A DNA stretch of 64,000 nt from Stegostoma tigrinum (Eukaryota), in assembly GCF_030684315.1 (NCBI RefSeq), contig NC_081369.1, forward strand, positions 10,082,035 through 10,146,034, read 5' to 3'. The notes beneath the pieces were generated by a model, which made no database searches, was not told the origin of the DNA, and saw nothing but the letters and a program-made list of their open reading frames with translations. A program made the position numbers and the translations under genes. Below, piece by piece: positions 15,734-61,569 of this stretch (the stretch's first letter is position 1; each line of letters opens with the position of its first letter).

Positions 15734-16910
15734 AGGACCGCAACTTTCCCCTCACCGTGGTCGAGAACGCCCTTGACCGCGTCTCCCGCATTTCCTGCAA
15801 CACATCCCTCACACCCCGCCCCCGCCACAACCGCCCAAAGAGGATCCCCCTCATTCTCACACATCACTGCACCAACCTCCGGATACAACGCATCATCCTC
15901 TGACACTTCCGCCATCTACAATCCGAGCCCACCACCCAAGACATGTTTCCATCCCCACCCTTGTCTGCTTTCCGGAGAGACCACTCTCTCCATGACTGCC
16001 TTGTTCGCTCCACACTGCCCTCCAACCCACCACACCCGGCACCTTCCCCTTTAACCGCAGGAAGTGCTACACTTGCCCCCACACCTCCTCCCTCACCCCT
16101 ATCCCAGGCCCCAAGATGACTTTCCATATTAAGCAGAGGTTCACCTGCACATCTGCCAATGTGGTATAATGTACCCACCGTACCCGGTGTGGCTTCCTCT
16201 ACATTGGGGAAACCAAGCAGAGGCTTGGGGACCACTTTGCAGAACACCTCCGCTCGGTTTGCAATAAACAACTGCACCTCCCAGTCGTGAACCATTTCAA
16301 CTCCCCTTCCCATTCTTTAGGTGACATGTCCATCCTGGGCCTCCTGCAGTGCCACAATGATGCCACCCAAAGGTTGCAGGAACAGCAACTCATATTCCGC
16401 TTGGGAACCCTGCAGCCCAATGGTATCAATGTGGACTTCACCAGCTTCAAAATCTCCCCTTCCCCCACTGCATCCCAAACCAGTCCAGTTCGTCCCCTCC
16501 CCCCACTGCATCACACAACCAGCCCAGCTCATCCCCTCCCCCCACTGCATCCCAAAACCAGCCCAGCCTGCCTCTGCCTCCCTAACCTGTTCTTCCTCTC
16601 ACCCATCCCTTCCTCCCACCCCAAGCTGTACCTCCATTTACTACCTACTAACCTCATCCCACCTCCTTGACCTGTCCATCTTCCCTGGACTGACCTATCC
16701 CCTCCCTACCTCCCCACCTATACTCTCCTCTCCACCTATCTTCTTTTCTCTCCATCTTCGGTCCGTCTCCCCCTCTCTCCCTATTTATTCCAGAACCCTC
16801 ACCCCATCCCCCTCTCTGATGAAGGGTCTAGGCCCAAAACGTCAGCTTTTGTGCTCCTGAGATGCTGCTTGGCCTGCTGTGTTCATCCAGCTCCACACTT
16901 TATTATCTTC
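15734..16910 (+). mobile_element. 5'-truncated Penelope-like element inserted into a CR1 RT; 13-bp TSD
   Basis: GIY-YIG region and 3' UTR are nearly identical to the copy at 60.4-61.57 kb. TSD gatagataagtca (15721-15733) / gatagatcagtca (16911-16923). The empty site is in copy B at 43951. Confidence 0.92.
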
Positions 16911-18050
16911 GATAGATCAGTCACTTGGGCCAAATGGGATATACCCAATGTTTTTGCAGGAAGTGAGGGAAGAGATTGCCGTGCCTTTGGCAATGATCTT
17001 TGCATTCTCACTGCCCACTGGAGTAGTACTAGATGATTGGAGGGTGGCAAATATTATTCCATTGTTCAAGAAGGGGAACAGGGATAATACTGGGAATTAC
17101 AGACCAGTCAGTGTTACTTCTGTGGTGGGCAAATTATTGGACAAGATTCTGAGAGATAGTATTTATGATTATTTAGAAAAGCACAGTTTGATTATAAATA
17201 GTCAGCATGGCATTGTGAGGGACAGGTTAGCCTCACAAGCCTTACTGAATTCTTTGAGGATGCCACAAAACACATTCAAGAAGGTTGAGCAGTGGATGTG
17301 GCATATATGGATTTTAGCAAGGCATTTGATAAGGTTCCTCCTGGTAGGCTCATTCAGAACGTTAGGAGGCATAGGATTCAGGGAAATTTAGCTGTCTGGA
17401 TACAGAATTGGCTGTCCATTAGAGGACAGAGGGTGGTATTGGATGGAAAGTATTCAGCCTGGAGCTCTGTGACAAGTGGTGTTCTGCACGGATCTGTTCT
17501 GGGACCTCTGCACTTTGTGATATTTATAAATGACTGGAATGAGTAAGTGGAAGGATGAGTTAGTTAATTTGCTGATGGCCTGAAAGTTGGTGGATTTGTG
17601 GATATTGTGTACAGCTGTTGTAGTTGCAACAGAACATTGACAGGAGGCAGAGCTGGGCAAAGAAGTGGCAGATGGAATTCAACCTGGTAAAATGTGAACT
17701 GATTCATTTTGGAAGGTTGAATTTGAATGCAGAATACAGGGTTAATGGCAGAATTCTTGGCAGTGTGGAGGAACAGAGGGAGCTGGGGGTCGACGTCCAT
17801 AGATCCCTCAAAATTGTTATCCAGGTTGATAGGGTTTTTAAGAAGGTATGCTGCAGTTCTACAAAACACCAGTTAGACCACACTTGGAATACGCTGTTCG
17901 GTTCTGGTCACCTTATTAGAGGAAGGATGTGGAAGCTTTAGAGAGGTTGCAGATGAGATTTACGAGGACACTGCATGGACTGGATGGCAGGTCTTATGAG
18001 GAAAGGTTGAGGGAGCTGGGGCTTTTCTCACTGGAGCGAAGAAGGATGCC
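16911..18050 (+). mobile_element. CR1-type LINE ORF2 (RT) fragment, decayed
   Basis: DDWRVANIIPLFKKG, NYRPVSVTSVVGK, YMDFSKAFDKVP, SGVLHGSVLGPL, WQMEFN..KC. Confidence 0.92.
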
Positions 18051-29596: not shown

Positions 29597-29651
29597 ATGT
29601 CGGCGAGAGCAGCGTTTCTCTTCATGGCTCTTCTGGTTATGCCTTGGCCCG
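29597..29651 (+). CDS. IgSF receptor exon 1: signal peptide
   Basis: MSARAAFLFMALLVMPWP plus 1 nt, donor gtactc. Hydrophobic leader in phase 1, which matches the V exon. Confidence 0.7.
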
Positions 29652-29862
29652 GTACTCTTTAATGTTACCATGTGCCCTCTTCGAGTAACTTAGACTGTCT
29701 TTTATATTTACAGATACTGCATTACAAATTTAGGTGCCCTGTTTCTCCAATCCGTTGCGCGTGGGTTGTTCTTAATTTTTTCTTGTATTTTACTCCTCTA
29801 TTGTTTTTCTTACCCTGCTCTCGACAACTAATTTTTCTTTATTTTACTTATTTTTTTAATAG

Positions 29863-30168
29863 TCACTAAAGTAATTTCGAGCAAAGTAGATCAGTTTCCC
29901 AAACTTCTGAAGGCGTCCAGAGGTGACAATGTTTCCATCTTCTGCACATTTCCCATATTTGAAGACGTTCCTGAAGTATTTTGGTGGAGACGCAATGAGG
30001 AATCTTTTCTGGGAAGCGACAACAGAAAGCGATTTCATGTCCAGAAAGGAAGGGGCTCACTTCATGTTCTCAATGTCACTGTTGCAGACTCCGGAATGTA
30101 TTATTGCAAAATAAAACACCAGCAAACTATCATTGCAGCTGGAAGTGGATCGTTGCTGACAGTGTGCG
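29863..30168 (+). CDS. IgSF receptor exon 2: V-set domain with germline-encoded J-like G strand (VJ type)
   Basis: Strong polypyrimidine tract then taatag, donor gtaagt, 306 nt, phase 1-1. Translates (V)TKVISSKVDQFPKLLKASRGDNVSIFCTFPIFEDVPEVFWWRRNEESFLGSDNRKRFHVQKGRGSLHVLNVTVADSGMYYCKIKHQQTIIAAGSGSLLTVC. Has the B-strand Cys, C-strand Trp, DSGxYYC and GxGxxLTV. Confidence 0.95.
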
Positions 30169-30504
30169 GTAAGTGATACTGTACAAGGGACAAAAAACGT
30201 CTTCAGCTGTTTTGTGTAATTTATATGGCCTGAGGTTTTATAATTCGAGGAAAATCCAGTGATAGGAATTCGCTCCATACAGTCAGGGGGTTCTCTTCCC
30301 CTTTGATTTTGCTGTTCAACGGGCGTTGATTCACTATCGCCTGTTATGCGCCATTTCTAAAGATCAATTCCACCACTCATTGTCTATGACATTGCACTGT
30401 GCCATTAATCTAATGAGTGCAGAAACGGTCGAAACCGCGTCAATACAGTGAAACAGCATAACTGTTTAAATTCTTGGGTGAAATTAATTTTTTGGCTCGA
30501 AACC

Positions 30505-30970
30505 TGTAACAAGAGTAGATATTACTGGAGAAATTCAGAAGGTCTGGCAGCATCTGTGTGAGCGAATGTTTAAAGTCCAGTGATCCTTCTTCAGAACGGT
30601 TCTGACGAACGTCTCTGGACTCAAAATGTTAACTGTCTTTTCGCTTCACAGACAGCCTCAAAATAAGGGGGAATTTCTTCATTCAAAGAGTTGTGAATCC
30701 ATAAAATTGCCTGCCATTGAAGCAGTTAGGGCTACATCTTTGAATGTTTTCTTAAGTCGATTTTTGAACAGTAAATGAATTAAGAGCGATGGTGAGTGGG
30801 CGCTAAGTTGAGCTCAATCCACCAAAAGTTCAGCCACGATGTTATTCAATGGTGTTCGAGGCTCAAAGGGCCAGATGACCTCTTGCTGCTCCTATTTCTT
30901 CTGCTGTTACGTTCTGATGCTGCCAGACCTACCGAATTTCTCCAGTAATTCTCCAGTAATTTATATTTTT
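30505..30970. mobile_element. Fold-back Penelope-end element interrupted by a CR1 3' fragment (~30650-30916)
   Basis: Left arm ttactggagaaattcagaaggtctggcagcat; right arm atgctgccagacctaccgaatttctccagtaa resumes after the CR1 tail. Confidence 0.7.
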
Positions 30971-31010
30971 GTGTCGTGTGGTAAAATGCTTGGTTTACCT
31001 CTTACCAAAG

Positions 31011-31150
31011 TAACAGTGCTAAAACGCGACAATAGAAACAATGTTGACACAAAGACAAAAATGCTGCGGATTTTGGAAAGTAACAGTGCTAAAATGCGAC
31101 ATTAGAAACAATGTTGACACAAAGACAAAAATGCTGCGGATTTTGGAAAG
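31011..31150 (+). repeat. 70-bp tandem duplication (2 copies, 2 mismatches)
   Basis: taacagtgctaaaa(c/t)gcgaca(a/t)tagaaacaatgttgacacaaagacaaaaatgctgcggattttggaaag at 31011-31080 and 31081-31150. Confidence 0.95.
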
Positions 31151-32712
31151 TTTGAAGCACGAATACAATTTACTTGAAACGTGTGTGAACATCTACAGAG
31201 GTAGTACGAACATAAGAATTAGAAGCAAGAGTAAACTATTCGTCCCTCAACTCTACTCAGGCACGCAATCAAGTTATGGCTGATCTGACTGCGGTCTCAA
31301 CGGCACTTTCTCGTCGACCGCGGTGCTATTGGATATCGCTGTAAATCCAAAACAGTTAACGTTTCAGGTCATAAACTTTCATAGGAACAATTATAACAGC
31401 TTATACATCGTTTTTATAGAAGATTACAAAGACCACCTGATAGGCATCTGCAATATGCATTGATTGTAAATTCGGGTGAATTATAGAATGCCACAGCCAC
31501 TATTATACAACCAACACAGGGTAACTTTTCGACGTGCAAATTGCTGATCGTAACGTTCTGTAACAAACTGTTCAAACGTGGAGATGGATTTGGGGGGAAA
31601 TTAATCCTGGGGATCAAGGGAATAGAATAAAATCGGGCAAACGGAGTTGAGATACAGTCCAACCGTAACCTAAGTGAATGGCAGAGTAAGCTGTGCTGGT
31701 GTGGATTCGATGGCTCAAGTGTCCTACTTCAACATTGAAGGGGTTCTAAATTTCTATTAACGAGAGAAATTCAAAGGCAAATTCGCCAAGAGTGTTGACT
31801 GCTCATTTTCCAATACTGACAATCGCTAAACGCCATTTCTTACACAAATGAATCGCATGATCCAGTGAGAAGACAAGCGTTGATCTTGCCCTAAACGCTG
31901 GATTCTATTCGACGTCCTGAAGCTTCCAGGACTTTCTGTAATACACGCACAACAGGCATCGTGAATGAAGGACGGCACCAAACATAACTAAAAAAACTCT
32001 GCACTCCTGAGTATGTCGTGTATTATTTCGATGCAATGGCACTCACGACAGGGGACCAAGATAACACGCATATTTTTGTTCTCCGTGAGAGTTCTGTGAT
32101 ATCTAAAGCAGGCCTGTGGGGAAAATGGAAGAGTTCTCAGCCTTTGCGGGTAATAAAAGTCCGCAAAAATCTGGAAATGAATGAAATATCTACCTTAATA
32201 ATTCCGATGTATTAAAATAAAAAAACATGCGCAGAATAGATGTTAAGAATATTGACTGTAATAAACATCAAAACAATGCAAACCCCGCAAAATTATATCC
32301 AGCTGAAAACGGATTGAAGATTGAGGGGCCACACGTTCGCTTTAGTAAATGGTTAATGTAGAATTGATTTTGAGAAGGGGTTTTCAGGCGAAAACGGGAA
32401 TACGAATCGATTGTTGTTTCAGGCTCAAAGGGTCGAATAGCTTTCTGAATGGAGCGGTTTGCTACACCTAATTCGTATGTTTCCTCCAGGTAGAATCTCC
32501 TTCAGGGAAAAGAAAAACTATGTCCAACAAACTGAAAGCGCTTTCAGAAGGGCAAAACCCTCGGGATTATATTAAGACACACACTTCATCAAAAATTTTC
32601 CTTCCGGGCCCATCCTCACTGCGCATTGTTTAAAAACATCCTAACATTATGCGGTGTAATTTTACAAACAAATGCAAAGATCAAGGTTAAAATACGACAA
32701 CAAAGAAAACTA

Positions 32713-32820
32713 AGATAACAAAGTGTGGAGCTGGATGAACACAGCAGGCCAAGCAGCATCTTAGGAGCACAAAAGCTGACGTTTCGGGCCTAGACCCTTC
32801 TTCAGAAAAGGGGGATGGGG
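32713..32820 (-). mobile_element. Short Penelope 3'-end insertion with 9-bp TSD and hammerhead-like core
   Basis: TSD agaaaacta at 32704-32712 and 32821-32829. Minus strand CTGAAGAAGGGTCTAGGCCCGAAACGTC at 32778-32805. Confidence 0.82.
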
Positions 32821-32925
32821 AGAAAACTATTGTCGCATTAGGAATAACGTGCGATACGATTACGGTGTGGAGGGGAGGAAACGGGAGAGAATGTAATTTT
32901 TTTAATGTTTTACTTTCTGTTGTAG

Positions 32926-33222
32926 TTCCACCAACCCACCTGACAATCGTCCCCGTGGAAGGAATTTCGGGAAATTACTTGAAATTCGAGTGTGAAACAT
33001 CTGCCTTTTATCCGGAGGATTTAGGCATCACCTGGTTAAGAGATGGTGTCAAACTTCAGGCTGGAATAGAGACTGTGAAAAACATGACCGTGGATGGGCT
33101 GTATGAGGTTTCCAGTTCATTGGAAGAAGCACAGCTTGTGCGAAGCGGTGTAATTTATACCTGTCTGGTGTCTCATGTTTGTCTTCAGGTGCCCGCTAGC
33201 GTCAGCTACACCGTTTATCGCG
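32926..33222 (+). CDS. IgSF receptor exon 3: C1-set Ig domain
   Basis: Acceptor ctttctgttgtag, donor gtaagg, 297 nt, phase 1-1. Translates (V)PPTHLTIVPVEGISGNYLKFECETSAFYPEDLGITWLRDG...DGLYEVSSSL...YTCLVSHVCLQVPASVSYTVYR. C1 hallmarks: C-x4-FYP, W, YTCxVxH. Confidence 0.96.
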
Positions 33223-34413
33223 GTAAGGTGGAAAATGTTCCCACTTGGGAGTTGGGATTTCTTATGGAGCCGGATTGTGATTCTGGAAGACCTTAAATGT
33301 GTATTTTTTATGGTATTGAAGTAGCTGTAACTCGTGGATATCTTGTATGTGACCGGTGTTTATTCTCAATTGAACCTATTCAAGCTGTGCATGTATATTG
33401 TTTATCCTGTTCAGCTAATCTCCGCCCAAAACGTCTGATGTTGCTCTAACCCTACAATTTAGAAACTTCTGGCCTTTTAATGTCTCCCTACGTCTTTCAG
33501 TGTTTAAGACACTTCATCCTTATTTCTCTCTGTTCTAAGACTACTTTATGTTTGGCCGATAATGCTCTGTGAAATGTCGTAGAATTATTTGTAGCATAGT
33601 TCAAGGTGCAGCACAATTGCAAATTTACGTTATATACGCTAAAATTTGCAGTCGGTGTTGTCCGAGAAGACTGGAAAAGGATGTCATAAAGCATACAAAA
33701 TCCTTTCGGGTCTTGAAAAGGTAAATGAGGGAAGGATATTTCCCCTGGCTGATTTTCGAGAATCAGAAAACACAGTTTCAAAGTAAGGGGCAGGTGTTTT
33801 AGAAATGAAGAGGAATTCCTTCAACCAGAAACTTGGGAATTCTACACCACCCTCCCATTCTTCCCACCCCGACACTCTGCCGGAATGCCGGAAAAGTTTG
33901 AAATACTAGATCGACAGAGTTCCAGACGTCAAATGATATGTAATTAGCGTGAGAAAATAACTCTTATTAAGTTCAGTGGAGCGTGCCCGAACATCCCAGA
34001 GTCTACCCCGTTCCTGTTGTTACGTTCCTTGCAACTGCGGTTAGGAAGGAACAAAATTGCCAGGTCTTGCAATTGTTGTGCGCCTGTCTGGTTTCAGACA
34101 TTCAGTAAATAAATGCAAATTCCTTTACACATAGCAAACAACCCTCCTGTGCAGCGAGAATTTTCCCGCGCCTTTCAGTCATGAAATGCGTTTTCTCCAT
34201 GAAATGCATTGCTGAACGGCAATCAATGTCCTGTGATGCACATTAAGGGTCTTTTGTAGCTGTTCCCACCGAAATTAAAACGCTCCAACTTGGCTAACAG
34301 TGGGGTTATCCTGGGAGACTTCTTTGCAATTTATCATCCTGTGCATGCTGCTTTGCGCGTGTAACTCGCTGTGTTCCACAATTGTTCAGTTCCATCAACT
34401 GTTCATCCTGTAG

Positions 34414-34518
34414 GTGAAGTTATCAATCTTCCCATGATCGTTGGATGTGCAGGAGGTGCATTGGCAATGTTACTATTCGCAATATATTTGGTGACACTGA
34501 AATTGAAGGCATCGGCTG
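34414..34518 (+). CDS. IgSF receptor exon 4: transmembrane
   Basis: Acceptor catcctgtag, donor gtaaga, 105 nt, phase 1-1. Translates (G)EVINLPMIVGCAGGALAMLLFAIYLVTLKLKASA: hydrophobic helix with no charged residue, followed by KLK stop-transfer. Confidence 0.92.
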
Positions 34519-34810
34519 GTAAGAGTTTTTCTTATTTCGCTGGGTACTTTTTATTTCCTCAGATCCAACGTAAAAGCATGATGGCGGGTGACGAATCAAG
34601 GACTGTGACTTCACATTGTAGCGATGAGAATCTAACGTAGATGTGAAATGCAAGTATTTCATTTTTTTGTCGAACTACACATGTTGCTACAATCGAAATT
34701 ATTGCTCGGTTAGAGTCCAGTTCCTAATCACGAAACTTTGTTTCGTAGATTTTGACTCTCGGCATTAAAACGGATGTTTTCGAACTGACGACTAGACATC
34801 CTCAGATTTT

Positions 34811-35020
34811 GTATCAGTGATAATGGCAGCTGCAGATGCTGGAGAATCCAAGATAACAAAGTGTGGAGCTGGATGAACACAGCAGGCCCAGCAGCATCTC
34901 AGGAGCGCAAAAGCTGACGTTTCGGGTCTCTGATGAAGGGTCTAGACCCGAAACGTCAGCTTTTGTGCTCCTGAGATGCTGCTGGCCCTGCTGTGGTCAT
35001 CCGGCTTCACATTTTGTTAT
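34811..35020. mobile_element. Fold-back (palindromic) Penelope-end element with 14-bp TSD
   Basis: TSD catcctcagatttt at 34797-34810 and 35021-35034. Inverted arms of about 75 bp. Central CTGATGAAGGGTCTAGACCCGAAACGTC at 34930-34957. Confidence 0.9.
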
Positions 35021-35273
35021 CATCCTCAGATTTTATTTCCGTTGTAATGCTGTGGTGTCAACGGGTCGACTCACAACTGGCGCTGTCACACGGAGACAAA
35101 CCCTACATCATTGGGTATAGCGCGATGTGACCAGTAAGTAAGCAGGTGAAACCTTCGAGTGTAGATTTTCGTACTAAATAAAAAGTAAATGTTTTTAGCA
35201 GCGAATGCATGACACTAGATTTGGTGATACGCCGACTTTGTTACTGACGGTGCATTTCTGTACTTTCTATTAG

Positions 35274-35317
35274 GCAAAGGGAGAAATTCGACGGAAGCAA
35301 GTCAGAATGGCGATCCG
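35274..35317 (+). CDS. IgSF receptor exon 5: cytoplasmic 1
   Basis: Branch-point-like actgac, then acceptor ctttctattag and donor gtaatg. 44 nt, phase 1-0. Translates (G)KGRNSTEASQNGDP. Confidence 0.78.
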
Positions 35318-36269
35318 GTAATGCGACATAATTCTTTACACTCCTAACAAAAATGGTAGAGAGGGTGGCCCATAGGAAGGATAACTATGAATTTTATATT
35401 CATTCGAAATTACTTACTTTTTCATAGAACATAGAATTCTATATCACGGGATGCAAATCCCGCGCCTCTGCCGCCTGTATTTTAATTCGATTAGTTCCAC
35501 TCTCACGGTATTTATCTGTTTACCTCATTTTTCGTTTCAATCCAATTCATTTTTAAAGGTTCCTATCTAATTTCTTCCTCTCACTCTGCGCTTGTGGGCA
35601 GCTCCCTCAAATGAGCTGCAGGGGGAAAAAAAAACTCTCCCCAGATGACAGGGGACTTTCCAGTCTCGAAAACCTGGACGTCTTCCTAATGTGGTGCCTG
35701 GAGTGGTTCACTATACCTCACGTCTTTCGGTCCCGTATGCTTTTGTTGGCAGTGCTGGCGGCAATCTGTGTAGCAATTGGCCGGTACGGTGGGTTGAGGG
35801 GAGAGAGAAGTGGGGTGGAATAATGGATGTGGCAATGTTGCAGGAGAGTTTTTTCCGGATTCTAATTGTTGGTCGCCATTTAGAGGATGTAAATTTCCAA
35901 AAGTGTAAAGTGAGCAGAATAAGCCTTAGCTGTCAGAACTTCCAATCGGTTAGGCTAATTATGGAATAAAAAAAACCTGCCGTAGTCACAACAAGGTCAA
36001 ACAGAGGTCAAAATATACCAGCTAATAGTAAATATGTATTATTTGTTCGCTTGATGTTAAAATTGAGGTGAATACATTAAATGCTCTGGGATTCATGTTT
36101 AGATCATTACTCCGCACCACATTGGTGAAATATTAGATGCAAATACTTGAGAGTAGACAAAATAAAATTGCGACCATGTTTGATCGTCTACTGTCTACAC
36201 GCTTACCGTGTCAGGTTCAGTTCCAATCGGTAACGCCTGGCGTCACAATCAAACTCGCTGCTGTCATAG

Positions 36270-36740
36270 TCATAGAGTCACAAAGTCAGAAATCATACAG
36301 CACGGAAATAGAACCTTCAGTCCTACCAGTCCATACAAATTTGACTAGACCCAGCTTCCTGCTCCTGAACCAAATCCCTCTAAGTATTTCCGAATCATGT
36401 ACTTACTTAAATTTCTTTTAAAAGTAGTAGTTGCACCCACATCCACCACTTGCTCAGGAAGTTCATTCCATACTCGAAACACCGTCTAAAAAATTTGACC
36501 CCATGTATTTTTTAAATGTCTCTCCTCTCACCTTAAAAACATGCCCCCAGTCTTGAAATAACTATCCTAGGGAAAAGATAACTATACCTATACACCTCAT
36601 TATTTCATCAACTTCCATTAGGCCGCCTCTGAACTTCCTAAGCTCCAGTGGAAAAAAAATTCCAAGCCTATCCAGCCTTTCTTTATAACTCAAACCTTCC
36701 ATTCCCGGCAACATCCTGATAAATCTATTCTGAACCCTCT
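36270..36740 (-). mobile_element. CR1-type LINE 3' end
   Basis: Reverse-strand CR1 C-terminal and 3' UTR sequence, ending just upstream of the exon 6 acceptor. Confidence 0.75.
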
Positions 36741-36769
36741 TATCAATAATTCATATCTTATTTTCCTAG

Positions 36770-36839
36770 CTTAGACAAAGACTGACTGAAGAAAATGCCG
36801 CGTATGCTAATATAAACTTGAAAGCCAACAAGGTTCCAG
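36770..36839 (+). CDS. IgSF receptor exon 6: cytoplasmic 2 with ITIM-like tyrosine motif
   Basis: Acceptor ttattttcctag, donor gtaaga, 70 nt, phase 0-1. Translates LRQRLTEENAAYANINLKANKVP (motif AAYANI). Confidence 0.8.
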
Positions 36840-36974
36840 GTAAGATAGAAGAATTGTCAAGTGTAAAGTATCCAGGTCAATATTCTGATAATGGCGTCAA
36901 TTTGAAAAAAAAAGGATAGTAGACAGTACGAAGGGAAGGATGTGCTGCAATTTTGACTTCATGGAGCAGAAGAT

Positions 36975-37485
36975 ACAGTGGTAATCCAGATGTCAAGGTT
37001 AATACTATGGGGATACGGATTCAAATCCCACCAGAGCAACTAAGTGAGCTTAATTGGAATCGATAAATCTAGAATTTAAAGCTAGTCTCAGTAATGTCGA
37101 GCATATGAACTGTCATTAATTGTTATCAGAAAAGAAAAGGTTCCCTTCTTCTTTTATACAAGACACTGGTGATAATACTGGAAAACTGTGTACATTACTG
37201 GTAACCCTTTGATAGAGGAATATTAATATATTGAAAGCAACTCAGAGAACGTTCACTGGACTAATATGCGATACAAGTAGATTCAGTTACGAGACCTAAT
37301 CATGATAAGACATGGATTCAATAATGGAATTCCAGGAAGGAAATCTGCCATCCTTGAGTAGACTGCCGCACATGTGTGGACAGAGCCACAGCAATATGGT
37401 TGACTCTCAACCAACATCTGGGCAGTTAGGGATGGGCAATGAATGCTGACCCAACCAGTGATGTCTACATGTTGTAAATGAAAGA
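36975..37485 (+). mobile_element. tRNA-derived SINE split by a CR1 fragment (~37140-37310)
   Basis: B-box-like ggattcaaatcccacca, body ggaaggaaatctgccatcctt, and tail gggcagttagggatgggcaatgaatgctg, which is shared with the LINE tail at ~24470. Confidence 0.6.
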
Positions 37486-37499
37486 ACAAAAAAAATGAC

Positions 37500-39650
37500 C
37501 CATTTAGACCATCGAGTCTGCTCCACCATCTAGTGAAATGAAGATAGATCTTACAAACCTCTTCGCAACGTTCCTGCATCTTCCCTATACTACTTCATTC
37601 CTTTACGAATTGAAATCTACTTTAGACTTGAATGTTCTTAATTACCTAACTGAGTCAACCGTTCATAAGAAATAGTTCAACAAATTCACTACCCTGTCAG
37701 CAAAGAAGTTCCTCCTCACCTCTGTTTTAAATGTGCAAGCATTTCCTCTGAGATTATGCTCTCTGGTCCTGGACTCTGTGACATGGGAAACTTAATCTCC
37801 ACATCTATCCTGTCAAGTCTCTGAAGAATCTTTTATATTTCAATCACATCACCTCTCATTCTTCTAAATTTCAATGAGTACATGTTCAGCCTACTAAATC
37901 TCTCCTCATAAAAGACTTCCTTCATCCCTAGGAACAGCCCAGTGAACTTTGCCTGGACTGCCTCCAGAGCTAATACATCTTTTCTGAGATAAGGGGACGA
38001 AAACTGTTCACGGCATTCCAACTGAGGCCCTAACTATTGCTTGATATAGTGTTGGCAAATACTCCTACTTTTATATTCCATTCCCTTTGAAATGAAGGCC
38101 CTTGTGCCTGCTCTAAAACCTGCTGAAATTAGGTTCTAGCTTTTTTTTGTGATTCATATGTGAGGAATCTCAAATCGGTTTGTTCCATAGCTTTCTACTG
38201 CCTTGAATTTAAATAATTTTCAGCTCCTCTATCCTTTCTGTGACACTGCATAACCTCACATCTCCCACATTGCATTCCATCTTTGTCGCTTAATGTAACC
38301 TGTTTCTATCACTCGAAAAAAAACTTTTAAAGTCATCCTCACATCTTAGCCATCACAATTTCGTTAATGTTATCTGCAAAATTGGCCATTGCGCATGCAT
38401 TTTCTGCATACACGTCTTCAGGATATATATTTGGAAAAATTGTGGCCCTGCCCCTAATCTCAATGGCACAGAAAGGGTTCTAGATTTTCATTATAAAATG
38501 CTTTGTCCCCATTCTAATTCTCACTGCTCCAGTAGTTAGCCAATGCTCTTTGGATGTTAATGTGCTACCCAGAGAGCGTGGTCTTTTATCTTATTAAGTA
38601 AGCTAACATGTGGTATTTAAGCAAATGTTTTCTTGAAAATCCCAATATGTTACACCCACTGCTTCCCCTTTGTCTGTACCCCTTTTAAACTCCGTAAAGA
38701 ATTCCAGTAGGGTTGTCAGGCATGATTATTCCTACATGAATCCAAGCTGAATCTGCTTAACATAATGAGCTTCTAAATATTCTGCATCATTTATCACAGA
38801 CTGATGCATTTCCCCAATTATCAAAGTTCTGCTAACTGGTCTATTACTGTCTGCTTCCGTTTTAAACAAAGATGTTATTCTGGCAATATTTTTAAATATC
38901 TGGGAGGTTTATTTTCATAATCAAAGGATTTTAGGAAGATTACTGCTGGCACATCAAGTACTATGGCTACTTCCTTTGATATCCTAGGAGGCTTCCAGTC
39001 AGATCCAGGGGACTTATTTGTCATATGCCCCATTCGTTTCCCTCATCCCCTTTCTCCAGTGATAGTTATTGTACTTAATTTCACTCCTCCTTTGGCCCTT
39101 GAATATTTATTAATTTGGAATTTTCGTGCTGTTTTCCACTGTGAAAAGTATTCATTCAACTGCTCTACCATTTCCGGTTTCCCCATTATTCTATTCTTCC
39201 AACTCCTTTTGTGTTCTCTTTCCACTTTTTTTTAGGATGTAGGCTGTAGGATAGGATTCTCTGGAGTTTAGAAGAGCAAGAGATGACTTAATTTAATCAC
39301 ATAAGATTTTGACAGACTTGACCAAGTGGATATTGAATCTTTCCTTTGATTGGGAGAATCTAAAACTAGAATTCATAGTTTAAACATAAGAGATCACCTA
39401 TTTAAAACAAGTGAAGATTTTTTTTATTTTCTCTCATAGGCTTATGTGTCTTTTGAATTCCCTTCTTCAAAAGGCAGTAGATGCAGAAACTTTGTTTCTT
39501 TTTTAAGACAAGGGTGGACAGATTCTTGATTATCAACCAGATGAAAGGTGATTGGTGTGGCGGGGATTTGGGGAGCAGGGATGTAGAGCTGAGGATACAG
39601 TCAGATTATGGAATGATGGCGCGAGTTTGAAAGGCCGAGTGGCAGCTCAG
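37500..39650. mobile_element. CR1-type LINE fragments (minus ~37500-39230, plus ~39240-39650)
   Basis: ORF 37833 has QFSSPYLRKDVLALEAVQAKFTGL...RRMRGDVIE; ORF 39043 has EMVEQLNEYF. Confidence 0.75.
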
Positions 39651-40019
39651 ACACTCAATTCAAGGCACTTGGCTGTAGGCAATAAACACTGACATTGTCA
39701 TTGCCATCCTTCTGCCATGAAAAAAAAACAAAGCCATGCTACTGTTCGGGAATCGACGTCTCTTCTGCCGATTTCATCGGAAATAGAAATCAGGAGAGAT
39801 ATCATCAGTTTTGGACTGGAATACAATCAAAATTATTCGTGTTCCCTTTTATGAATTAGCAGTTATAATGATGGTCCTGAGCAACACCAACAACAAAAGC
39901 TTATCTGGTAAAAGTGGAGTGGCAAATATCCATTTTACAGACAAAGTACGAATTCAGGAAAAATCTGCCTTACGCCTAAACTGTCGAATCCAGCACCAGG
40001 ATTTTTTTTTCAACTTCAG

Positions 40020-40054
40020 GCAAACAGAGGAGCTCACTGTCGATGAGCTTTAAT
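40020..40054 (+). CDS. Possible IgSF receptor bridging exon 7
   Basis: Strong acceptor ttttttttcaacttcag but weak donor gtaata. 35 nt, phase 1-0. Translates (G)KQRSSLSMSFN and would reconcile the phases of exon 6 and the putative last exon. Confidence 0.3.
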
Positions 40055-40743
40055 GTAATACCTTCAAAGTCTTTTGGTACTGCACTAAACACTAGTGAAT
40101 TGAAAGGTCCCAAGTTTAACCTCCCAACTGTAGTGGGTCCGACCAAGTCTCACCATGTTCGTCTTGGATCCCAGGGATCGGAAGTCAACAGCGGCGGGGT
40201 AAAGGCAGTCGAGATTTGTGACTTGAGGTCTCTGCATGGAATAAGCAGATCAAATCGGCTGTCACGCCTCAGAAATTGGGCCTTGAAAGGGATATGTTGC
40301 AATATCAGCTTTCCAAACATATTTAACACGACGGTATTTGATTCATTTGCGATTTTAATCGAAGTAATAACCTGTTTTCTTAAACGGACAATACTGAAAT
40401 TCTAACTCACTTTGCGAGAAGTTCAAACCCGCACCTCTGCCCTCACATCCCCTCCTCGCAACAAAAAGCAAAGACGGTATCCCCCTCGTCGTCATCTATC
40501 ACAAAAAAACTAAACTCCGTCTTCAACGTATCGTTGTCCGCCAATTCCGCCACCTGCAAACATATTTTTTACGGCACGATTGAATACAAATCAGAGATAG
40601 AAAACAATACCAAACTCGATCACAATCTGAAGTTGGTAACTGTTGATTGTAAATTCCACTAAACCTTCTTAATAGAATCTTGACTGCCTCTGGCAATATG
40701 TCGTCGAAGGACTAACGGGAGATATTACATTTCACTTTCACAG

Positions 40744-40884
40744 ATCAAACACGGAAGCAAAGGTAACAAGCGGACTTTACGTCGTTTTCGAAATTGTCGA
40801 TTCCAAGAAAGCATCAAAACTAAACAGCAACTCAGTTCCGAAGTATATGCAGCAATGGTGGGGACAAGGAAAGCGAAACGCTGA
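40744..40884 (+). CDS. Putative terminal cytoplasmic exon of the IgSF receptor
   Basis: Acceptor ttcactttcacag with upstream actaac branch point. The phase-0 frame reads IKHGSKGNKRTLRRFRNCRFQESIKTKQQLSSEVYAAMVGTRKAKR-stop (motif EVYAAM). AATAAA at 41304-41309. The frame depends on the upstream exon: direct joining to exon 6 gives DQTRKQR-stop. Confidence 0.5.
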   Translation: MKHGSKGNKRTLRRFRNCRFQESIKTKQQLSSEVYAAMVGTRKAKR

Positions 40885-40974
40885 GACTCAAAGCATACTG
40901 GGAAGATGGGAGACATGAATGGATGCAGGTCCAGGGAATTTGGTTGTCCATCACAAAATGTGTTTCAATCAAAA

Positions 40975-41182
40975 TTATACCGCAGTGCGGAGCTGGAGGA
41001 GCACGGCAGACCAGGCTGGATCAGAGGAACAGAAAACTTGACGTTTCGGTTCGAGCACCTTCTTCAGGCCTTCAGACCCTTCTTATGAAGAAGGGTCCCG
41101 ACCCGAAATGTCAACGTTCTGGCTCCTTTGATGCTGCCTGGACTGCTGTGCTCCTCCAGCTCCAAACTGTGTTATCTCTGAT
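40975..41182. mobile_element. Degenerate fold-back Penelope-end element (in the putative 3' UTR)
   Basis: ggagctggaggagcacggcag... and ...ctgctgtgctcctccagctcc form inverted arms around tgaagaagggtcccgacccgaaatgtc. Confidence 0.75.
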
Positions 41183-59327: not shown

Positions 59328-59927
59328 CAACATGACACGGACTGTTATGAGGTTCTTGACTATCGTTTTCATTTACACAGTTTAGTTCTGCGAAGTGAAA
59401 TTGATGGCCACTCGTTTATAATCTACCCCAGCATACTCTTAGTTGCCAAAGATCTTGGGCTGCTGTGTCAAGAGTTGTGATGTTAGTTTGCCGGGTTATC
59501 AAGAATCAGAGGCAAAACTTCCACTCAATGTTCCGAATTCCACGAAAGTTCTGGCTCCGGATTTACATTGGAAGATGGGAGCAATGGGGAGAAAAATGTT
59601 ACAGCTTAATAGTATGACATTGCGACTACCTCTTCATAAAATGTGTTTCATGTGCATTGAGTTCTGTAAGAGTCCTCAGGAAATGCAATAACCCCATCAA
59701 CTTCACATGTCTCAGCTCTATCATCTGTATCACCAAGTGATATAAGTATATTTTATTATCGCATAAGGCATCATTAACTTACTTTTGAAATATCTCTGCT
59801 TGTGCCGGAAGCAACAGAGGAAACCGAATTGTTCATTGCACAATCTTGTTACCAATAGTAGATAAAAGAAATGACTTGCATGCAGATGCATAGCCATCCA
59901 AAGAATTCACAACTATGCGTTACTTTC

Positions 59928-61569
59928 TCACTTCCTACAGACTAAGGGGGTGGCCATGGGCACCCGCATGGGCCCCAGCTATGCCTGCCTCTTTGTAGGT
60001 TACGTGGAACAGTCCCTCTTCCGCACCTACACAGGCCCCAAACCCCACCTCTTCCTCCGGTACATTGATGACTGTATCGGCGCTGCCTCTTGCTCCCCAG
60101 AGGAGCTCGAACAGTTCATCCACTTCACCAACACCTTCCACCCCAACCTTCAGTTCACCTGGGCCATCTCCAGCACATCCCTCACCTTCCTGGACCTCTC
60201 AGTCTCCATCTCAGGCAACCAGCTTGTAACTGATGTCCATTTCAAGCCCACCGACTCCCACAGCTACCTAGAATACACCTCCTCCCACCCACCCTCCTGC
60301 AAAAATTCCATCCCCTATTCCCAATTCCTCCGCCTCCGCCGCATCTGCTCCCACGATAAGACATTCCACTCCCGCACATCCCAGATGTCCAAGTTCTTTA
60401 AGGACCGCAACTTTCCCCCCACGGTGATTGAGAACGCCCTTGACCGCGTCTCCCGCATTTCCCGCGACACATCCCTCACACCCCGCCGCCGCCACAACCG
60501 CCCCAAGAGGATCCCCCTCGTTCTCACACACCACCCTACCAACCTCCGGATACAACGCATTATCCTCCGACACTTCCGCCATTTACAATCCGACCCCACC
60601 ACCCAAGACATTTTTCCATCCCCTCCCCTGTCTGCTTTCCGGAGAGACCACTCTCTCCGTGACTCCCTTGTTCGCTCCACACTGCCCTCCAACCCCACCA
60701 CACCCGGCACCTTCCCCTGCAACCGCAGGAAATGCTACACTTGTCCCCACACCTCCTCCCTCACCCCCATCCCAGGCCCCAAGATGACATTCCACATTAA
60801 GCAGAGGTTCACCTGCACATCTGCCAATGTGGTATACTGCATCCACTGTACCCGGTGCGGCTTCCTCTACATTGGGGAAACCAAGCGGAGGCTTGGGGAC
60901 CGCTTTGCAGAACACCTCCGCTCAGTTCGCAACAAACAACTGCACCTCCCAGTGGCAAACCATTTCCACTCCCCCTCCCATTCTCTTGATGACATGTCCA
61001 TCATGGGCCTCCTGCACTGCCACAATGATGCCACCCGAAGGTTGCAGGAACAGCAACTCATATTCCGCCTGGGAACCCTGCAGCCATATGGTATCAATGT
61101 GGACTTCACCAGTTTCAAAATCTCCCCTTCCCCTACTGCATCCCTAAAGCAGCCCAGTGCATCCCCTCCCACCACTGCACCACACAACCAGCCCAGCTCT
61201 TCCCCCCCACCCACTGCATCCCAAAACCAGTCCAACCTGTCTCTGCCTCCCTAACCGGTTCTTCCTCTCACCCATCCCTTCCTCCCACCCCAAGCCGCAC
61301 CCCCAGCTACCTACTAACCTCATCCCACCTCCTTGACCTGTCCGTCTTCCCTGGACTGACCTATCCCCTCCCTACCTCCCCACCTACACCCTCTCCACCT
61401 ATCTTCTCTACTCTCCATCTTCGGTCCGCCTCCCCCTCTCTCCCTATTTATTCCAGTTCCCTCCCCCCAACCCCCTCTCTGATGAAGGGTCTAGGCCCGA
61501 AACGTCAGCTTTTGTGCTCCTGAGATGCTGCTTGGCCTGCTGTGTTCATCCAGCCTCACATTTTATTAT
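59928..61569 (+). mobile_element. Young 5'-truncated Penelope-like element with intact RT C-half, thumb and GIY-YIG ORF; 15-bp TSD
   Basis: Uninterrupted 434-aa ORF (GVAMGTRMGPSYA, RYIDD, CNRRKCYTC, NVVYCIHCTRCGFLYIGET). TSD ctatgcgttactttc (59913-59927) / ctatgcattactttc (61570-61584). Confidence 0.96.
61479..61506 (+). ncRNA. Minimal hammerhead ribozyme motif in the Penelope 3' terminal repeat
   Basis: CTGATGA-aGGGtctaggCCC-GAAA-CG-TC: conserved hammerhead core boxes, a short helix II and a palindromic ACGT in place of helix III. Confidence 0.6.

What the first reader, a model, noticed from the sequence alone, without database searches (positions are those of the whole stretch)
29597..40884. 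Hidden non-rearranging VJ-C1-TM-ITIM receptor with antigen-receptor-like architecture
Seen: six exons splice in frame (leader, V, C1, TM, cyto1, cyto2). The V exon already contains a J-like G strand (YYC-x9-AGSGSLLTV) and is followed by one true C1-set domain. The TM has no charged residue and the tail has tyrosine motifs (AAYANI, probably EVYAAM). The V exon's coding frame is absent from the ORF track. Established: C1 domains are largely confined to Ig, TCR, MHC, beta2m, tapasin, SIRP and B7-H6-like proteins, and a VJ-C1 ectodomain is the layout of TCR chains and Ig light chains and of their proposed pre-RAG ancestor. Inference: this is an inhibitory SIRP-like or 'VJ-C1' leukocyte receptor of cartilaginous fish, possibly from an uncharacterised family.
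Basis: partly seen in the sequence, partly recalled or inferred. Interest (0 to 1): 0.9.

Follow-up and report, generated by a model that had tools for sequence, protein, structure and literature searches.

The report
Shark antigen-receptor-like immune receptor gene
This is a real shark gene for a cell-surface immune receptor shaped like one chain of a T-cell receptor but made without gene rearrangement; it belongs to a large, unnamed family found only in sharks, rays and chimaeras, and this copy has lost the family's main inhibitory signalling motif.

Summary
The gene is real. Leader, V(J), C1 and transmembrane exons lie on the + strand with phase-1 junctions, and Pfam calls V-set and C1-set above threshold. 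V and J are one exon with no recombination signal.

The six-exon model is wrong in detail. Joining the TM exon directly to 'cyto1' gives stop codons. A missed 44-nt exon (35274-35317) restores the frame, so there are at least seven exons.

The gene is a member of a multigene family found only in cartilaginous fishes. Public annotations name its members inconsistently: SIRP-alpha-like, NCR3LG1-like, Ig-lambda-like, tapasin-related-like. The best match is a Chiloscyllium plagiosum protein (V 82%, C1 72% identity). The family has inhibitory forms (neutral TM, LTYAxL ITIM tails) and putative activating forms (Arg in the TM, short tail), sometimes with near-identical ectodomains.

In this copy the canonical ITIM segment is out of frame because of two compensating frameshifts, which short-read DNA contigs confirm. 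AAYANI and EVYAAM exist, but neither fits the ITIM consensus. The 3' splicing is unresolved and no RNA data were available.

I found no paper describing the family. This scan has flagged about ten similar loci, including a V-C1x3 gene and a decayed cluster, elsewhere in this genome.

The parts
29597..29651 (+). Leader exon (start codon, 18 codons + 1 nt, phase-1 donor)
   Evidence: The leader peptide aligns with homologue leaders (MS..YMALLG..WP).
29863..30168 (+). V(J) exon, 306 nt, phase 1 in and out. V and the J-like G strand sit in one exon.
   Evidence: Pfam V-set 1.3e-10, 41.9 bits against a cut-off of 26. 82% identical to P0165. AF2 model pLDDT 91. No RSS.
30141..30164 (+). J-like motif GSGSLLTV (G-x-G-x-x-L-x-V)
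   Evidence: G93 and G95 are nearly invariant across 38 family sequences. The motif was found in most family members with a V domain. The model shows a split G strand around it.
32926..33222 (+). C1-set exon, 297 nt, phase 1 in and out
   Evidence: Pfam C1-set 4.1e-10, 40.3 bits against a cut-off of 21. PDB hits are Ig constant, B7-H6 C, SIRP C1 and UrIg2 domains. 72% identical to P0165.
34414..34518 (+). Stalk/transmembrane exon. An alternative in-frame acceptor at 34390 would add 8 codons.
   Evidence: The neutral GCAGG-type TM matches the inhibitory family members. Homologue stalk length favours 34414.
35274..35317 (+). Cytoplasmic exon a, 44 nt (phase 1 to 0).
   Evidence: It matches the same segment of P0165 with score 54. 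Good AG/GT borders.
36770..36855 (+). Cytoplasmic exon b, carrying AAYANI (36797-36814). The homology-guided donor is at 36855 (phase 2, weak). A strong donor lies at 36839 (phase 1).
   Evidence: Read-through to ...KIEE parallels the homologues' ...RRAEE / ...RRHE.
40710..40884 (+). Last coding exon (homology-guided acceptor 40710, stop codon 40882-40884). Alternative acceptors at 40676, 40744 and 40808.
   Evidence: Both ends of the open frame match homologue tails. Short-read contigs cover it with no gaps.
40778..40819 (+). Remnant of the family's ITIM segment, readable only in the +1 frame relative to the open frame (YVVFEIVDSKKASK, against LTYAxLQxADSKKxSK in relatives)
   Evidence: 7 homologue tails match this frame here (scores 34-44), while the flanks match the other frame.
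40840..40857 (+). EVYAAM, the terminal tyrosine motif (non-canonical: E at -2, M at +3)
   Evidence: It corresponds to TLYAGI / AVYAEV of the homologues.

Best explanation
The locus is a germline-joined (non-rearranging) V(J)-C1 type I membrane receptor gene of at least seven exons. It is one member of a multigene family found so far only in cartilaginous fishes.

The family behaves like a paired-receptor family. Inhibitory members have a neutral transmembrane segment and tails with LTYAxL ITIMs. By analogy with SIRP-alpha and KIR, these would recruit SHP phosphatases (inferred). Putative activating members have an arginine at the outer end of the membrane span and a short tail, which would couple to an ITAM adaptor (inferred).

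The window's gene has the inhibitory-type transmembrane exon and an intact ectodomain. Its distal tail has suffered two compensating frameshifts that remove the canonical ITIM. Only a membrane-proximal YxxI (AAYANI) and a degenerate terminal YAAM remain.

The most likely product is a surface receptor with weakened or lost inhibitory signalling, that is, a decoy-like or decaying inhibitory member. The ligand is unknown.
For: Gene structure and domain calls:
- Exon borders, phases and frames.
- Pfam V-set and C1-set above threshold.
- No other Ig exon in the 64-kb window.
- No RSS.

Family:
- 25 strong hits (147-461 bits) in a profile search. Every one with a species label is chondrichthyan; one (P0019) is an unlabelled ENA contig. 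The next hits score 68 bits or less.
- In an exhaustive HMMER scan with the V exon, every family-type hit that I looked up and that carried a species name was a shark, ray or chimaera.
- The V tree pairs the window with P0165 at 100/99 support.

Two TM and tail types. In Scyliorhinus canicula an inhibitory and an activating form share 93% identical ectodomains. The two types are interspersed in the V tree.

Tail:
- Frame analysis against 10 homologue tails.
- Acceptor and phase enumeration.
- Short-read contigs from two samples cover exons a and b and the last exon with no indels.
Against: - No RNA run holds the locus, so no junction is proven and expression is unknown.
- The homology-guided junction 36855/40710 uses a weak donor (TT|GTCAAG) and a modest acceptor. 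The strong donor at 36839 would end the protein early: ES* at acceptor 40676 or DQTRKQR* at 40744.
- The activating role of the Arg-TM forms, and SHP recruitment, are inferred from other receptor families. They were not tested.
- P0165 may be a paralogue rather than the orthologue.
- 'Chondrichthyan-only' rests on searches with limited sensitivity for distant Ig domains.
Confidence: 0.65

Rival explanations
1. One reading: this is a fully functional inhibitory receptor whose tail tyrosines (AAYANI, EVYAAM) act as ITIM/ITSM and recruit SHP-1/SHP-2.
For: - Both motifs exist.
- A stop-free seven-exon model ending at 40884 can be drawn (models H and R).
- AAYANI sits where relatives have a conserved xYAxLN motif.
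- The TM is of the inhibitory type.
Against: - Neither motif fits (I/V/L/S)xYxx(I/V/L).
- The canonical family ITIM is frameshifted out.
- The six-exon join is out of frame.
- The EVYAAM tyrosine lies at the junction of a frameshifted stretch.
Confidence: 0.2
2. The copy is a pseudogene, or on its way to being one. It makes no stable transcript or protein, as expected in a birth-and-death multigene family.
For: - Two frameshifts in the last exon relative to more than 7 relatives.
- With the strong donor at 36839, the two best acceptors give immediate stops.
- High-copy repeats fill the introns, and one ends within about 60 nt of the exon b acceptor.
- An earlier scan note reports a decayed cluster of the same family on this chromosome piece (unchecked).
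Against: - Leader, V, C1, TM and exons a and b are all open, with conserved hallmark residues and good splice sites.
- The frameshifts compensate and keep the frame open to the conserved stop.
- V is 82% identical to the nearest homologue with no lesion.
Confidence: 0.25
3. The family is the shark counterpart of B7-H6 (NCR3LG1). It would then be a ligand for NKp30-type receptors rather than a receptor.
For: - The NCBI pipeline names several members 'NCR3LG1-like'.
- The C1 exon's best single-domain PDB hits include the B7-H6 C domain (40.5 bits, E 2.7e-9).
- In a structure search with the V-C1 model of homologue P0008, B7-H6 is tied for first (Z 15.5, 187 residues). It has the highest identity among the two-domain matches, 28%.
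Against: - The V exon's 60 best PDB hits include no B7-H6. Its best full-domain matches are shark VNAR and TCR alpha V.
- The V has a J-like GxG strand and no C'' strand.
- The family splits into ITIM and Arg-TM forms with shared ectodomains, which is a receptor trait.
- Z values for B7-H6, Rst, butyrophilins and PD-L2 are tied within 1.
Confidence: 0.1
4. The family is the chondrichthyan orthologue of SIRP, having lost one C1 domain.
For: - The commonest automatic name is 'SIRP-alpha-like' or 'SIRP-beta-1-like'.
- The family profile aligns to SIRP-alpha d1-d2 across V plus C1 (98 bits in two stretches).
- SIRP shows the same paired inhibitory/activating logic.
Against: - There is one C1 exon, not two.
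- Ig light chains and UrIg2 score as well as SIRP.
- Activating forms carry Arg at the outer membrane edge, not the mid-membrane Lys of SIRP-beta (own knowledge).
- No synteny could be examined.
Confidence: 0.1

Closest known systems
SIRP family (SIRP-alpha, -beta, -gamma)
   Same: - Non-rearranging V with a J-like strand, followed by C1-set domains.
- Paired inhibitory (ITIM) and activating (charged TM) members with similar ectodomains.
- The family profile aligns over V plus C1 of SIRP-alpha.
   Different: - One C1 domain instead of two.
- A short V without a C'' strand.
- Arg at the outer TM edge instead of a mid-membrane Lys in the activating forms (own knowledge for SIRP-beta).
- Found only in cartilaginous fishes.
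- This copy lacks a canonical ITIM.
B7-H6 (NCR3LG1) and the butyrophilin/B7 ectodomains
   Same: - V plus C1-like two-domain ectodomain in an extended arrangement.
- Best two-domain structural matches: Z 15-15.5, with B7-H6 at 28% identity.
- The C domain scores 40.5 bits.
- Same phase-1 exon-per-domain layout (own knowledge).
   Different: - The V is not B7-like by sequence and carries a J-like GxG strand.
- The family has ITIM and Arg-TM receptor forms.
Ig light chains and TCR chains
   Same: - V-J-C1 order with one C1.
- Foldseek's top 500 PDB hits are all Fab light chains.
- A kappa chain aligns end to end with the family profile (67.5 bits).
- The V exon's best full-domain hits are VNAR and TCR alpha.
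   Different: - V and J are one germline exon with no RSS.
- Low TM-scores (about 0.4), because the V-C geometry is extended rather than elbowed.
- The tail signals by itself rather than through CD3 or CD79.
UrIg and UrIg2 (PMC12227049)
   Same: - Non-rearranging single-exon VJ followed by C1-type domains.
- Restricted to cartilaginous fish.
- UrIg2 is the top PDB hit of the C1 exon by summed score.
   Different: - UrIg has three C domains and is secreted. UrIg2 has 9-11 C domains.
- Here there is one C1, a TM and a tyrosine-motif tail.
- The per-domain score to UrIg2 is only 24.6 bits.
- Many copies per genome, rather than single genes.
Other paired VJ receptors: teleost NITRs, hagfish APARs, lamprey TCR-like gene (own knowledge, not tested here)
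   Same: A germline V with a J-like strand on a membrane receptor, in ITIM or charged-TM versions.
   Different: As far as I recall, those lack a true C1-set domain (V only, V-I or V-C2).

Membership tests
Chondrichthyan V(J)-C1 paired-receptor family (database names: SIRP-alpha-like, NCR3LG1-like, Ig-lambda-like, tapasin-related-like) | V domain with the family's conserved residues (G20, C27, W40, D75, G77, Y79, C81, G93-x-G95) | tested here: met
   (invariant and near-invariant columns include the window row). 82% identity to P0165. Tree pairing at 100/99 support.
Chondrichthyan V(J)-C1 paired-receptor family | A single C1-set domain with FYPE...W...YTCxVSH | tested here: met
   Pfam C1-set 4.1e-10. 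Alignment. 72% identity to P0165.
Chondrichthyan V(J)-C1 paired-receptor family, inhibitory subtype | Neutral GCAGG-type transmembrane segment | tested here: met
Chondrichthyan V(J)-C1 paired-receptor family, inhibitory subtype | Distal LTYAxL ITIM in the open reading frame | tested here: not met
   the homologous segment is readable only in another frame (40778-40819).
ITIM-bearing inhibitory receptors (functional class) | (I/V/L/S)xYxx(I/V/L) in the cytoplasmic tail | tested here: not met
   AAYANI has A at -2. EVYAAM has E at -2 and M at +3.
SIRP | V-C1-C1 ectodomain | tested here: not met
   Only one C1 exon. No further Ig exon in the window. Homologues also have one C1.
SIRP | Orthology by synteny or phylogeny; CD47 binding | not testable with these tools
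No curated SIRP sequences were available.
B7-H6 / NCR3LG1 | B7-type V domain | tested here: inconclusive
   No B7-H6 among the 60 best PDB hits of the V exon. However, the two-domain model of a homologue aligns to B7-H6 at Z 15.5 and 28% identity.
B7-H6 / NCR3LG1 | Binds NKp30 | not testable with these tools
   Needs a binding assay.
Rearranging antigen receptors (Ig, TCR) | Separate V and J segments flanked by RSS heptamer-spacer-nonamer | tested here: not met
   V and J are contiguous in one exon. The only heptamer, at 30395 in the intron, has a nonamer match of 2/9 or less at either spacing.
UrIg / UrIg2 | VJ exon followed by three or more C1-type domains | tested here: not met
   One C1 exon. 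UrIg and UrIg2 architecture taken from PMC12227049.
Tapasin / TAPBPR | Large N-terminal domain before the C1 domain | tested here: not met
   The N-terminal domain is a 101-residue V-set Ig domain. The tapasin architecture is from my own knowledge.

The most novel reading that the evidence does not exclude
The family is a surviving lineage of membrane-bound, non-rearranging VJ-C1 chains that branched near the root of Ig/TCR, rather than from SIRP or B7. It would then be a living model of the pre-RAG antigen-receptor precursor, already wired for paired activating and inhibitory signalling and expanded by birth-and-death evolution in cartilaginous fishes.
Probability: 0.15. Interest if true: 0.85.

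Novelty: new variant of a known kind. Interest (0 to 1): 0.55.

Why it matters
[quoted passage not shown] The only shark examples described in the papers I could read (UrIg, UrIg2) have many C domains and are single genes.

This family has exactly one V(J) and one C1. It comes in inhibitory and putative activating versions and in many copies per genome. It spans sharks, rays and chimaeras, so it dates to the chondrichthyan ancestor or earlier.

If it is truly undescribed, it gives three things:
- a new paired innate receptor system in the oldest jawed vertebrates;
- a further outgroup for dating the RAG invasion;
- a reason to fix four conflicting automatic names in public annotations.

This particular copy adds a small point. 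Tails in this family decay piecemeal. Here the distal ITIM is lost. In the nearest homologue the proximal tyrosine is lost instead.

Tried and rejected
- RNA evidence: the look-up of sequencing runs found only four DNA-type runs from one study and no RNA holder. No junction could be tested.
Exon borders of homologues, synteny and MHC linkage could not be examined.
Exons were searched one by one by reference. The two-domain fold used a natural homologue (P0008).
- Assembly error as the cause of the frameshifts: rejected. Short-read contigs from two samples cover 40438-41100, 36710-37410 and 35200-36464 without gaps.
- Rearranging gene: rejected, as there is no RSS.
- Second Ig exon or paralogue inside the window: none.
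- Alternative activating-type TM exon in the window: no credible match.
- Named relatives through the 5.8-billion-protein index at E up to 10: nothing informative beyond the family.
- ESM Atlas: generic V/C1, CD80-like and CD200-like clusters only.
- Foldseek against the PDB: swamped by Fab light chains at TM about 0.4. The representative-chain search was more useful.
- Literature: the UrIg papers were found and read. The papers on PRARP, shark B7H6/NKp30 and the first UrIg report are not held. I cannot exclude that one of them mentions this family.


Full report
**What is in the sequence**

On the + strand there is a clean set of immunoglobulin-superfamily exons.
- Leader exon, 29597-29651: ATG, 18 codons plus one base.
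- V exon, 29863-30168: 306 nt.
- C1 exon, 32926-33222: 297 nt.
- Stalk/transmembrane exon ending at 34518. It has two in-frame acceptors, 34390 and 34414. Homologue stalk lengths favour 34414.

All junctions are phase 1 with AG/GT borders and no internal stops. The window has no N and no other Ig exon. The V frame is absent from the ORF list only because it has no upstream ATG, GTG or TTG.

**Domain identity**

The V exon scores Pfam V-set at 1.3e-10 (41.9 bits, cut-off 26). I-set follows close behind at 9e-8. The C1 exon scores C1-set at 4.1e-10 (40.3 bits, cut-off 21), far ahead of the CD80-like C2-set at 0.005.

An AlphaFold model of the V exon, built with a 38-sequence family alignment, reaches pLDDT 91. 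It shows A, A', B, C, D, E, F and G strands, a very short C' and no C'' strand. The G strand is interrupted at the G-S-G.

The nearest representative structures are tied: NCAM2 Ig1 (Z 14.7), a skate IgNAR V (Z 14.6, 25% identity), basigin, CD79b, TCR V and antibody V domains.

By sequence, the best full-domain PDB matches of the V exon are a shark VNAR (30.1 bits) and a TCR alpha V (28.2 bits). The higher-ranked contactins and DCC only sum many weak domain hits.

So the domain is a short, VNAR-like V with a true J-like strand, GSGSLLTV (30141-30164). The two glycines are nearly invariant in the family. V and J are one exon. The only RSS-like heptamer nearby (30395, intronic) has no nonamer. 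The gene therefore does not rearrange.

**The family**

The C1 exon, searched inside its stop-free ORF, and a family profile recover about 25 proteins at 147-461 bits. Every one with a species label is a cartilaginous fish; one (P0019) is an unlabelled ENA contig. The next hits fall to 68 bits or less.

An exhaustive HMMER scan of 1.84 billion representatives with the V exon gives the same picture. Every family-type hit that I looked up and that carried a species name is a shark, ray or chimaera:
- Sharks: Heterodontus, Heptranchias, Mustelus, Carcharodon, Chiloscyllium, Scyliorhinus.
- Rays: Mobula, Narcine, Hypanus, Pristis.
- Chimaera: Callorhinchus.

The automatic names conflict: SIRP-alpha-like, SIRP-beta-1-like, NCR3LG1-like, immunoglobulin lambda-1 light chain-like, tapasin-related-like, or uncharacterized. 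Many copies sit on one chromosome in Heterodontus.

The window's nearest relative is P0165 of Chiloscyllium plagiosum: V 82% and C1 72% identity, paired in the tree at 100/99 support.

Notes from this scan list about ten similar loci elsewhere in this genome. Two lie about 44 kb upstream of the window and about 35 kb beyond its end. The list also includes a V-C1x3 gene and a decayed cluster (unchecked).

**Two signalling types**

Family members fall into two kinds.
- A neutral, GCAGG-type membrane span followed by a long tail with one to four LTYAxL ITIMs.
- A span that opens with a conserved Arg and ends in D/E/N-His, followed by a short tail.

In Scyliorhinus canicula one protein of each kind shares a 93% identical ectodomain. 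The two kinds are interspersed in the V tree. That is the signature of paired inhibitory and activating receptors. The adaptor coupling and SHP recruitment are inferred, not shown. The window's gene has the neutral type.

**The tail of this copy**

Joining the TM exon straight to the AAYANI exon gives three stops. A 44-nt exon at 35274-35317 has good borders and matches the same segment of P0165. It restores the frame.

The AAYANI exon starts at 36770. It has a strong phase-1 donor at 36839. A weak phase-2 donor at 36855 corresponds to the homologues' ...EE boundary.

In the last exon, ten homologue tails were aligned to all three frames.
- The open frame matches at both ends: SQIKHGSKGNK against SQTKKGSEGNN, and the last 13 residues before the conserved stop at 40882-40884.
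- The middle segment, which in relatives carries the canonical ITIM (LTYAxLQxADSKKxSK), matches only the neighbouring frame (40778-40819).

So two compensating frameshifts have replaced the ITIM with unrelated residues.

A homology-guided seven-exon model (36855 joined to 40710) is stop-free and gives 355 codons. With the strong donor at 36839 the options are different:
- the two best acceptors give early stops (40676: ES*; 40744: DQTRKQR*);
- only a poor acceptor at 40808 reaches EVYAAM.

AAYANI (A at -2) and EVYAAM (E at -2, M at +3) both miss the ITIM consensus. P0165 has the opposite pattern. Its proximal tyrosine is gone (AASAAV) and its distal LTYATL and TLYAGI are kept.

**Is the DNA right?**

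Four DNA-type runs from two samples of one study hold the locus. Their contigs cover 35200-36464, 36710-37410 and 40438-41100 with no gaps and no exonic differences. The frameshifts are therefore real and not assembly errors. One sample may be the assembly's own source.

**Comparison with known families**

The family profile against PDB sequences aligns end to end with Ig light chains (a kappa chain at 67.5 bits in one stretch). It also aligns with SIRP-alpha d1-d2 (98 bits in two stretches), UrIg2 (110 bits over three C domains, of which 48.8 are for V-C1) and B7-H3.

The C1 exon alone scores about 40 bits against each of the B7-H6 C domain, an IgM constant domain and SIRP C1 domains.

A two-domain model of the natural homologue P0008 has pLDDT 89 and pTM 0.80.
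- With Foldseek it finds only Fab light chains, at TM about 0.4.
- Against representative chains, the best two-domain fits are extended V-C ectodomains: Rst, B7-H6 (Z 15.5, 28% identity over 187 residues), butyrophilins and PD-L2, all tied.
- Its C1 half fits MHC class II membrane-proximal domains and Ig constant domains at rmsd 1.4-2.2 A.

No named family stands out. The family sits at roughly equal distance from SIRP, B7-H6 and the antigen receptors.

**Literature**

UrIg and UrIg2 are the described non-rearranging VJ-C1 genes of elasmobranchs. They have three and 9-11 C domains respectively, and that paper does not mention SIRP, ITIMs or this family (PMC12227049). The MHC paper PMC10751288 cites NKp30, PRARP and UrIg only. 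The PRARP, shark B7H6/NKp30 and first UrIg papers are not held. A prior description therefore cannot be excluded.

**Limits**

- No RNA data were available.
- The joined spliced protein was deliberately not built, searched or folded. Frames were checked exon by exon.
- Read laying was given 5,901 letters.

**Verdict**

The gene and the architecture are real. The exon count and the 'ITIM' label need correction. The locus is one somewhat degenerate member of a large, unnamed chondrichthyan family of V(J)-C1 paired receptors. The interest lies in the family more than in this copy.

Noticed in passing
window 59875-61251 (+) and 16861-17388 (+): A long ORF with weak reverse-transcriptase and GIY-YIG endonuclease matches, the pairing typical of Penelope-like retroelements. 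There is a second RT fragment. The rest of the window's long ORFs gave no Pfam hit.
   Followed up: partly
window 36382-36775, 37367-37563, 37761-38154: Intronic stretches with word depth of 1,600 to 42,000, against about 10-25 elsewhere in all four DNA runs. These are very high-copy repeats. The first ends within about 60 nt of the acceptor of the AAYANI exon.
   Followed up: no
window 30165-30167 and 33180-33182: Two extra cysteines: one right after the J-like strand (TVC) and one in the C1 G-strand region (HVC). They occur together in the window gene, P0165 and P0001, and in no other member where both domains could be read; P0010 has only the first. This could be a clade-specific extra disulfide or an interchain bond.
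   Followed up: partly
homologue P0165 (Chiloscyllium plagiosum): The public model repeats the C1 domain and has no transmembrane segment, so it is probably a mis-built gene model. Its proximal tail motif has lost the tyrosine (AASAAV), while the distal LTYATL and TLYAGI are intact. This is the mirror image of the window's copy.
   Followed up: no
homologues P0007 and P0003 (Scyliorhinus canicula): An ITIM-type and an Arg-TM-type protein share a 93% identical ectodomain over 217 residues. This points to recent duplication, gene conversion or alternative 3' exons.
   Followed up: partly
window 35748, 37208, 37487, 39074, 39078, 39899, 39980, 40148: Seven single-base differences and one 1-base insertion between the window and the read contigs. 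All are intronic, and all but one are fixed in both samples.
   Followed up: no
family alignment A3, mapped on window 29865-30167: Column variability is highest in the A-B region, the B-C loop (CDR1-like) and the F-G loop (CDR3-like). It is lowest in the C, D-E-F and J-like strands. The V is more variable than the C1 (mean entropy 1.81 against 1.53).
   Followed up: partly
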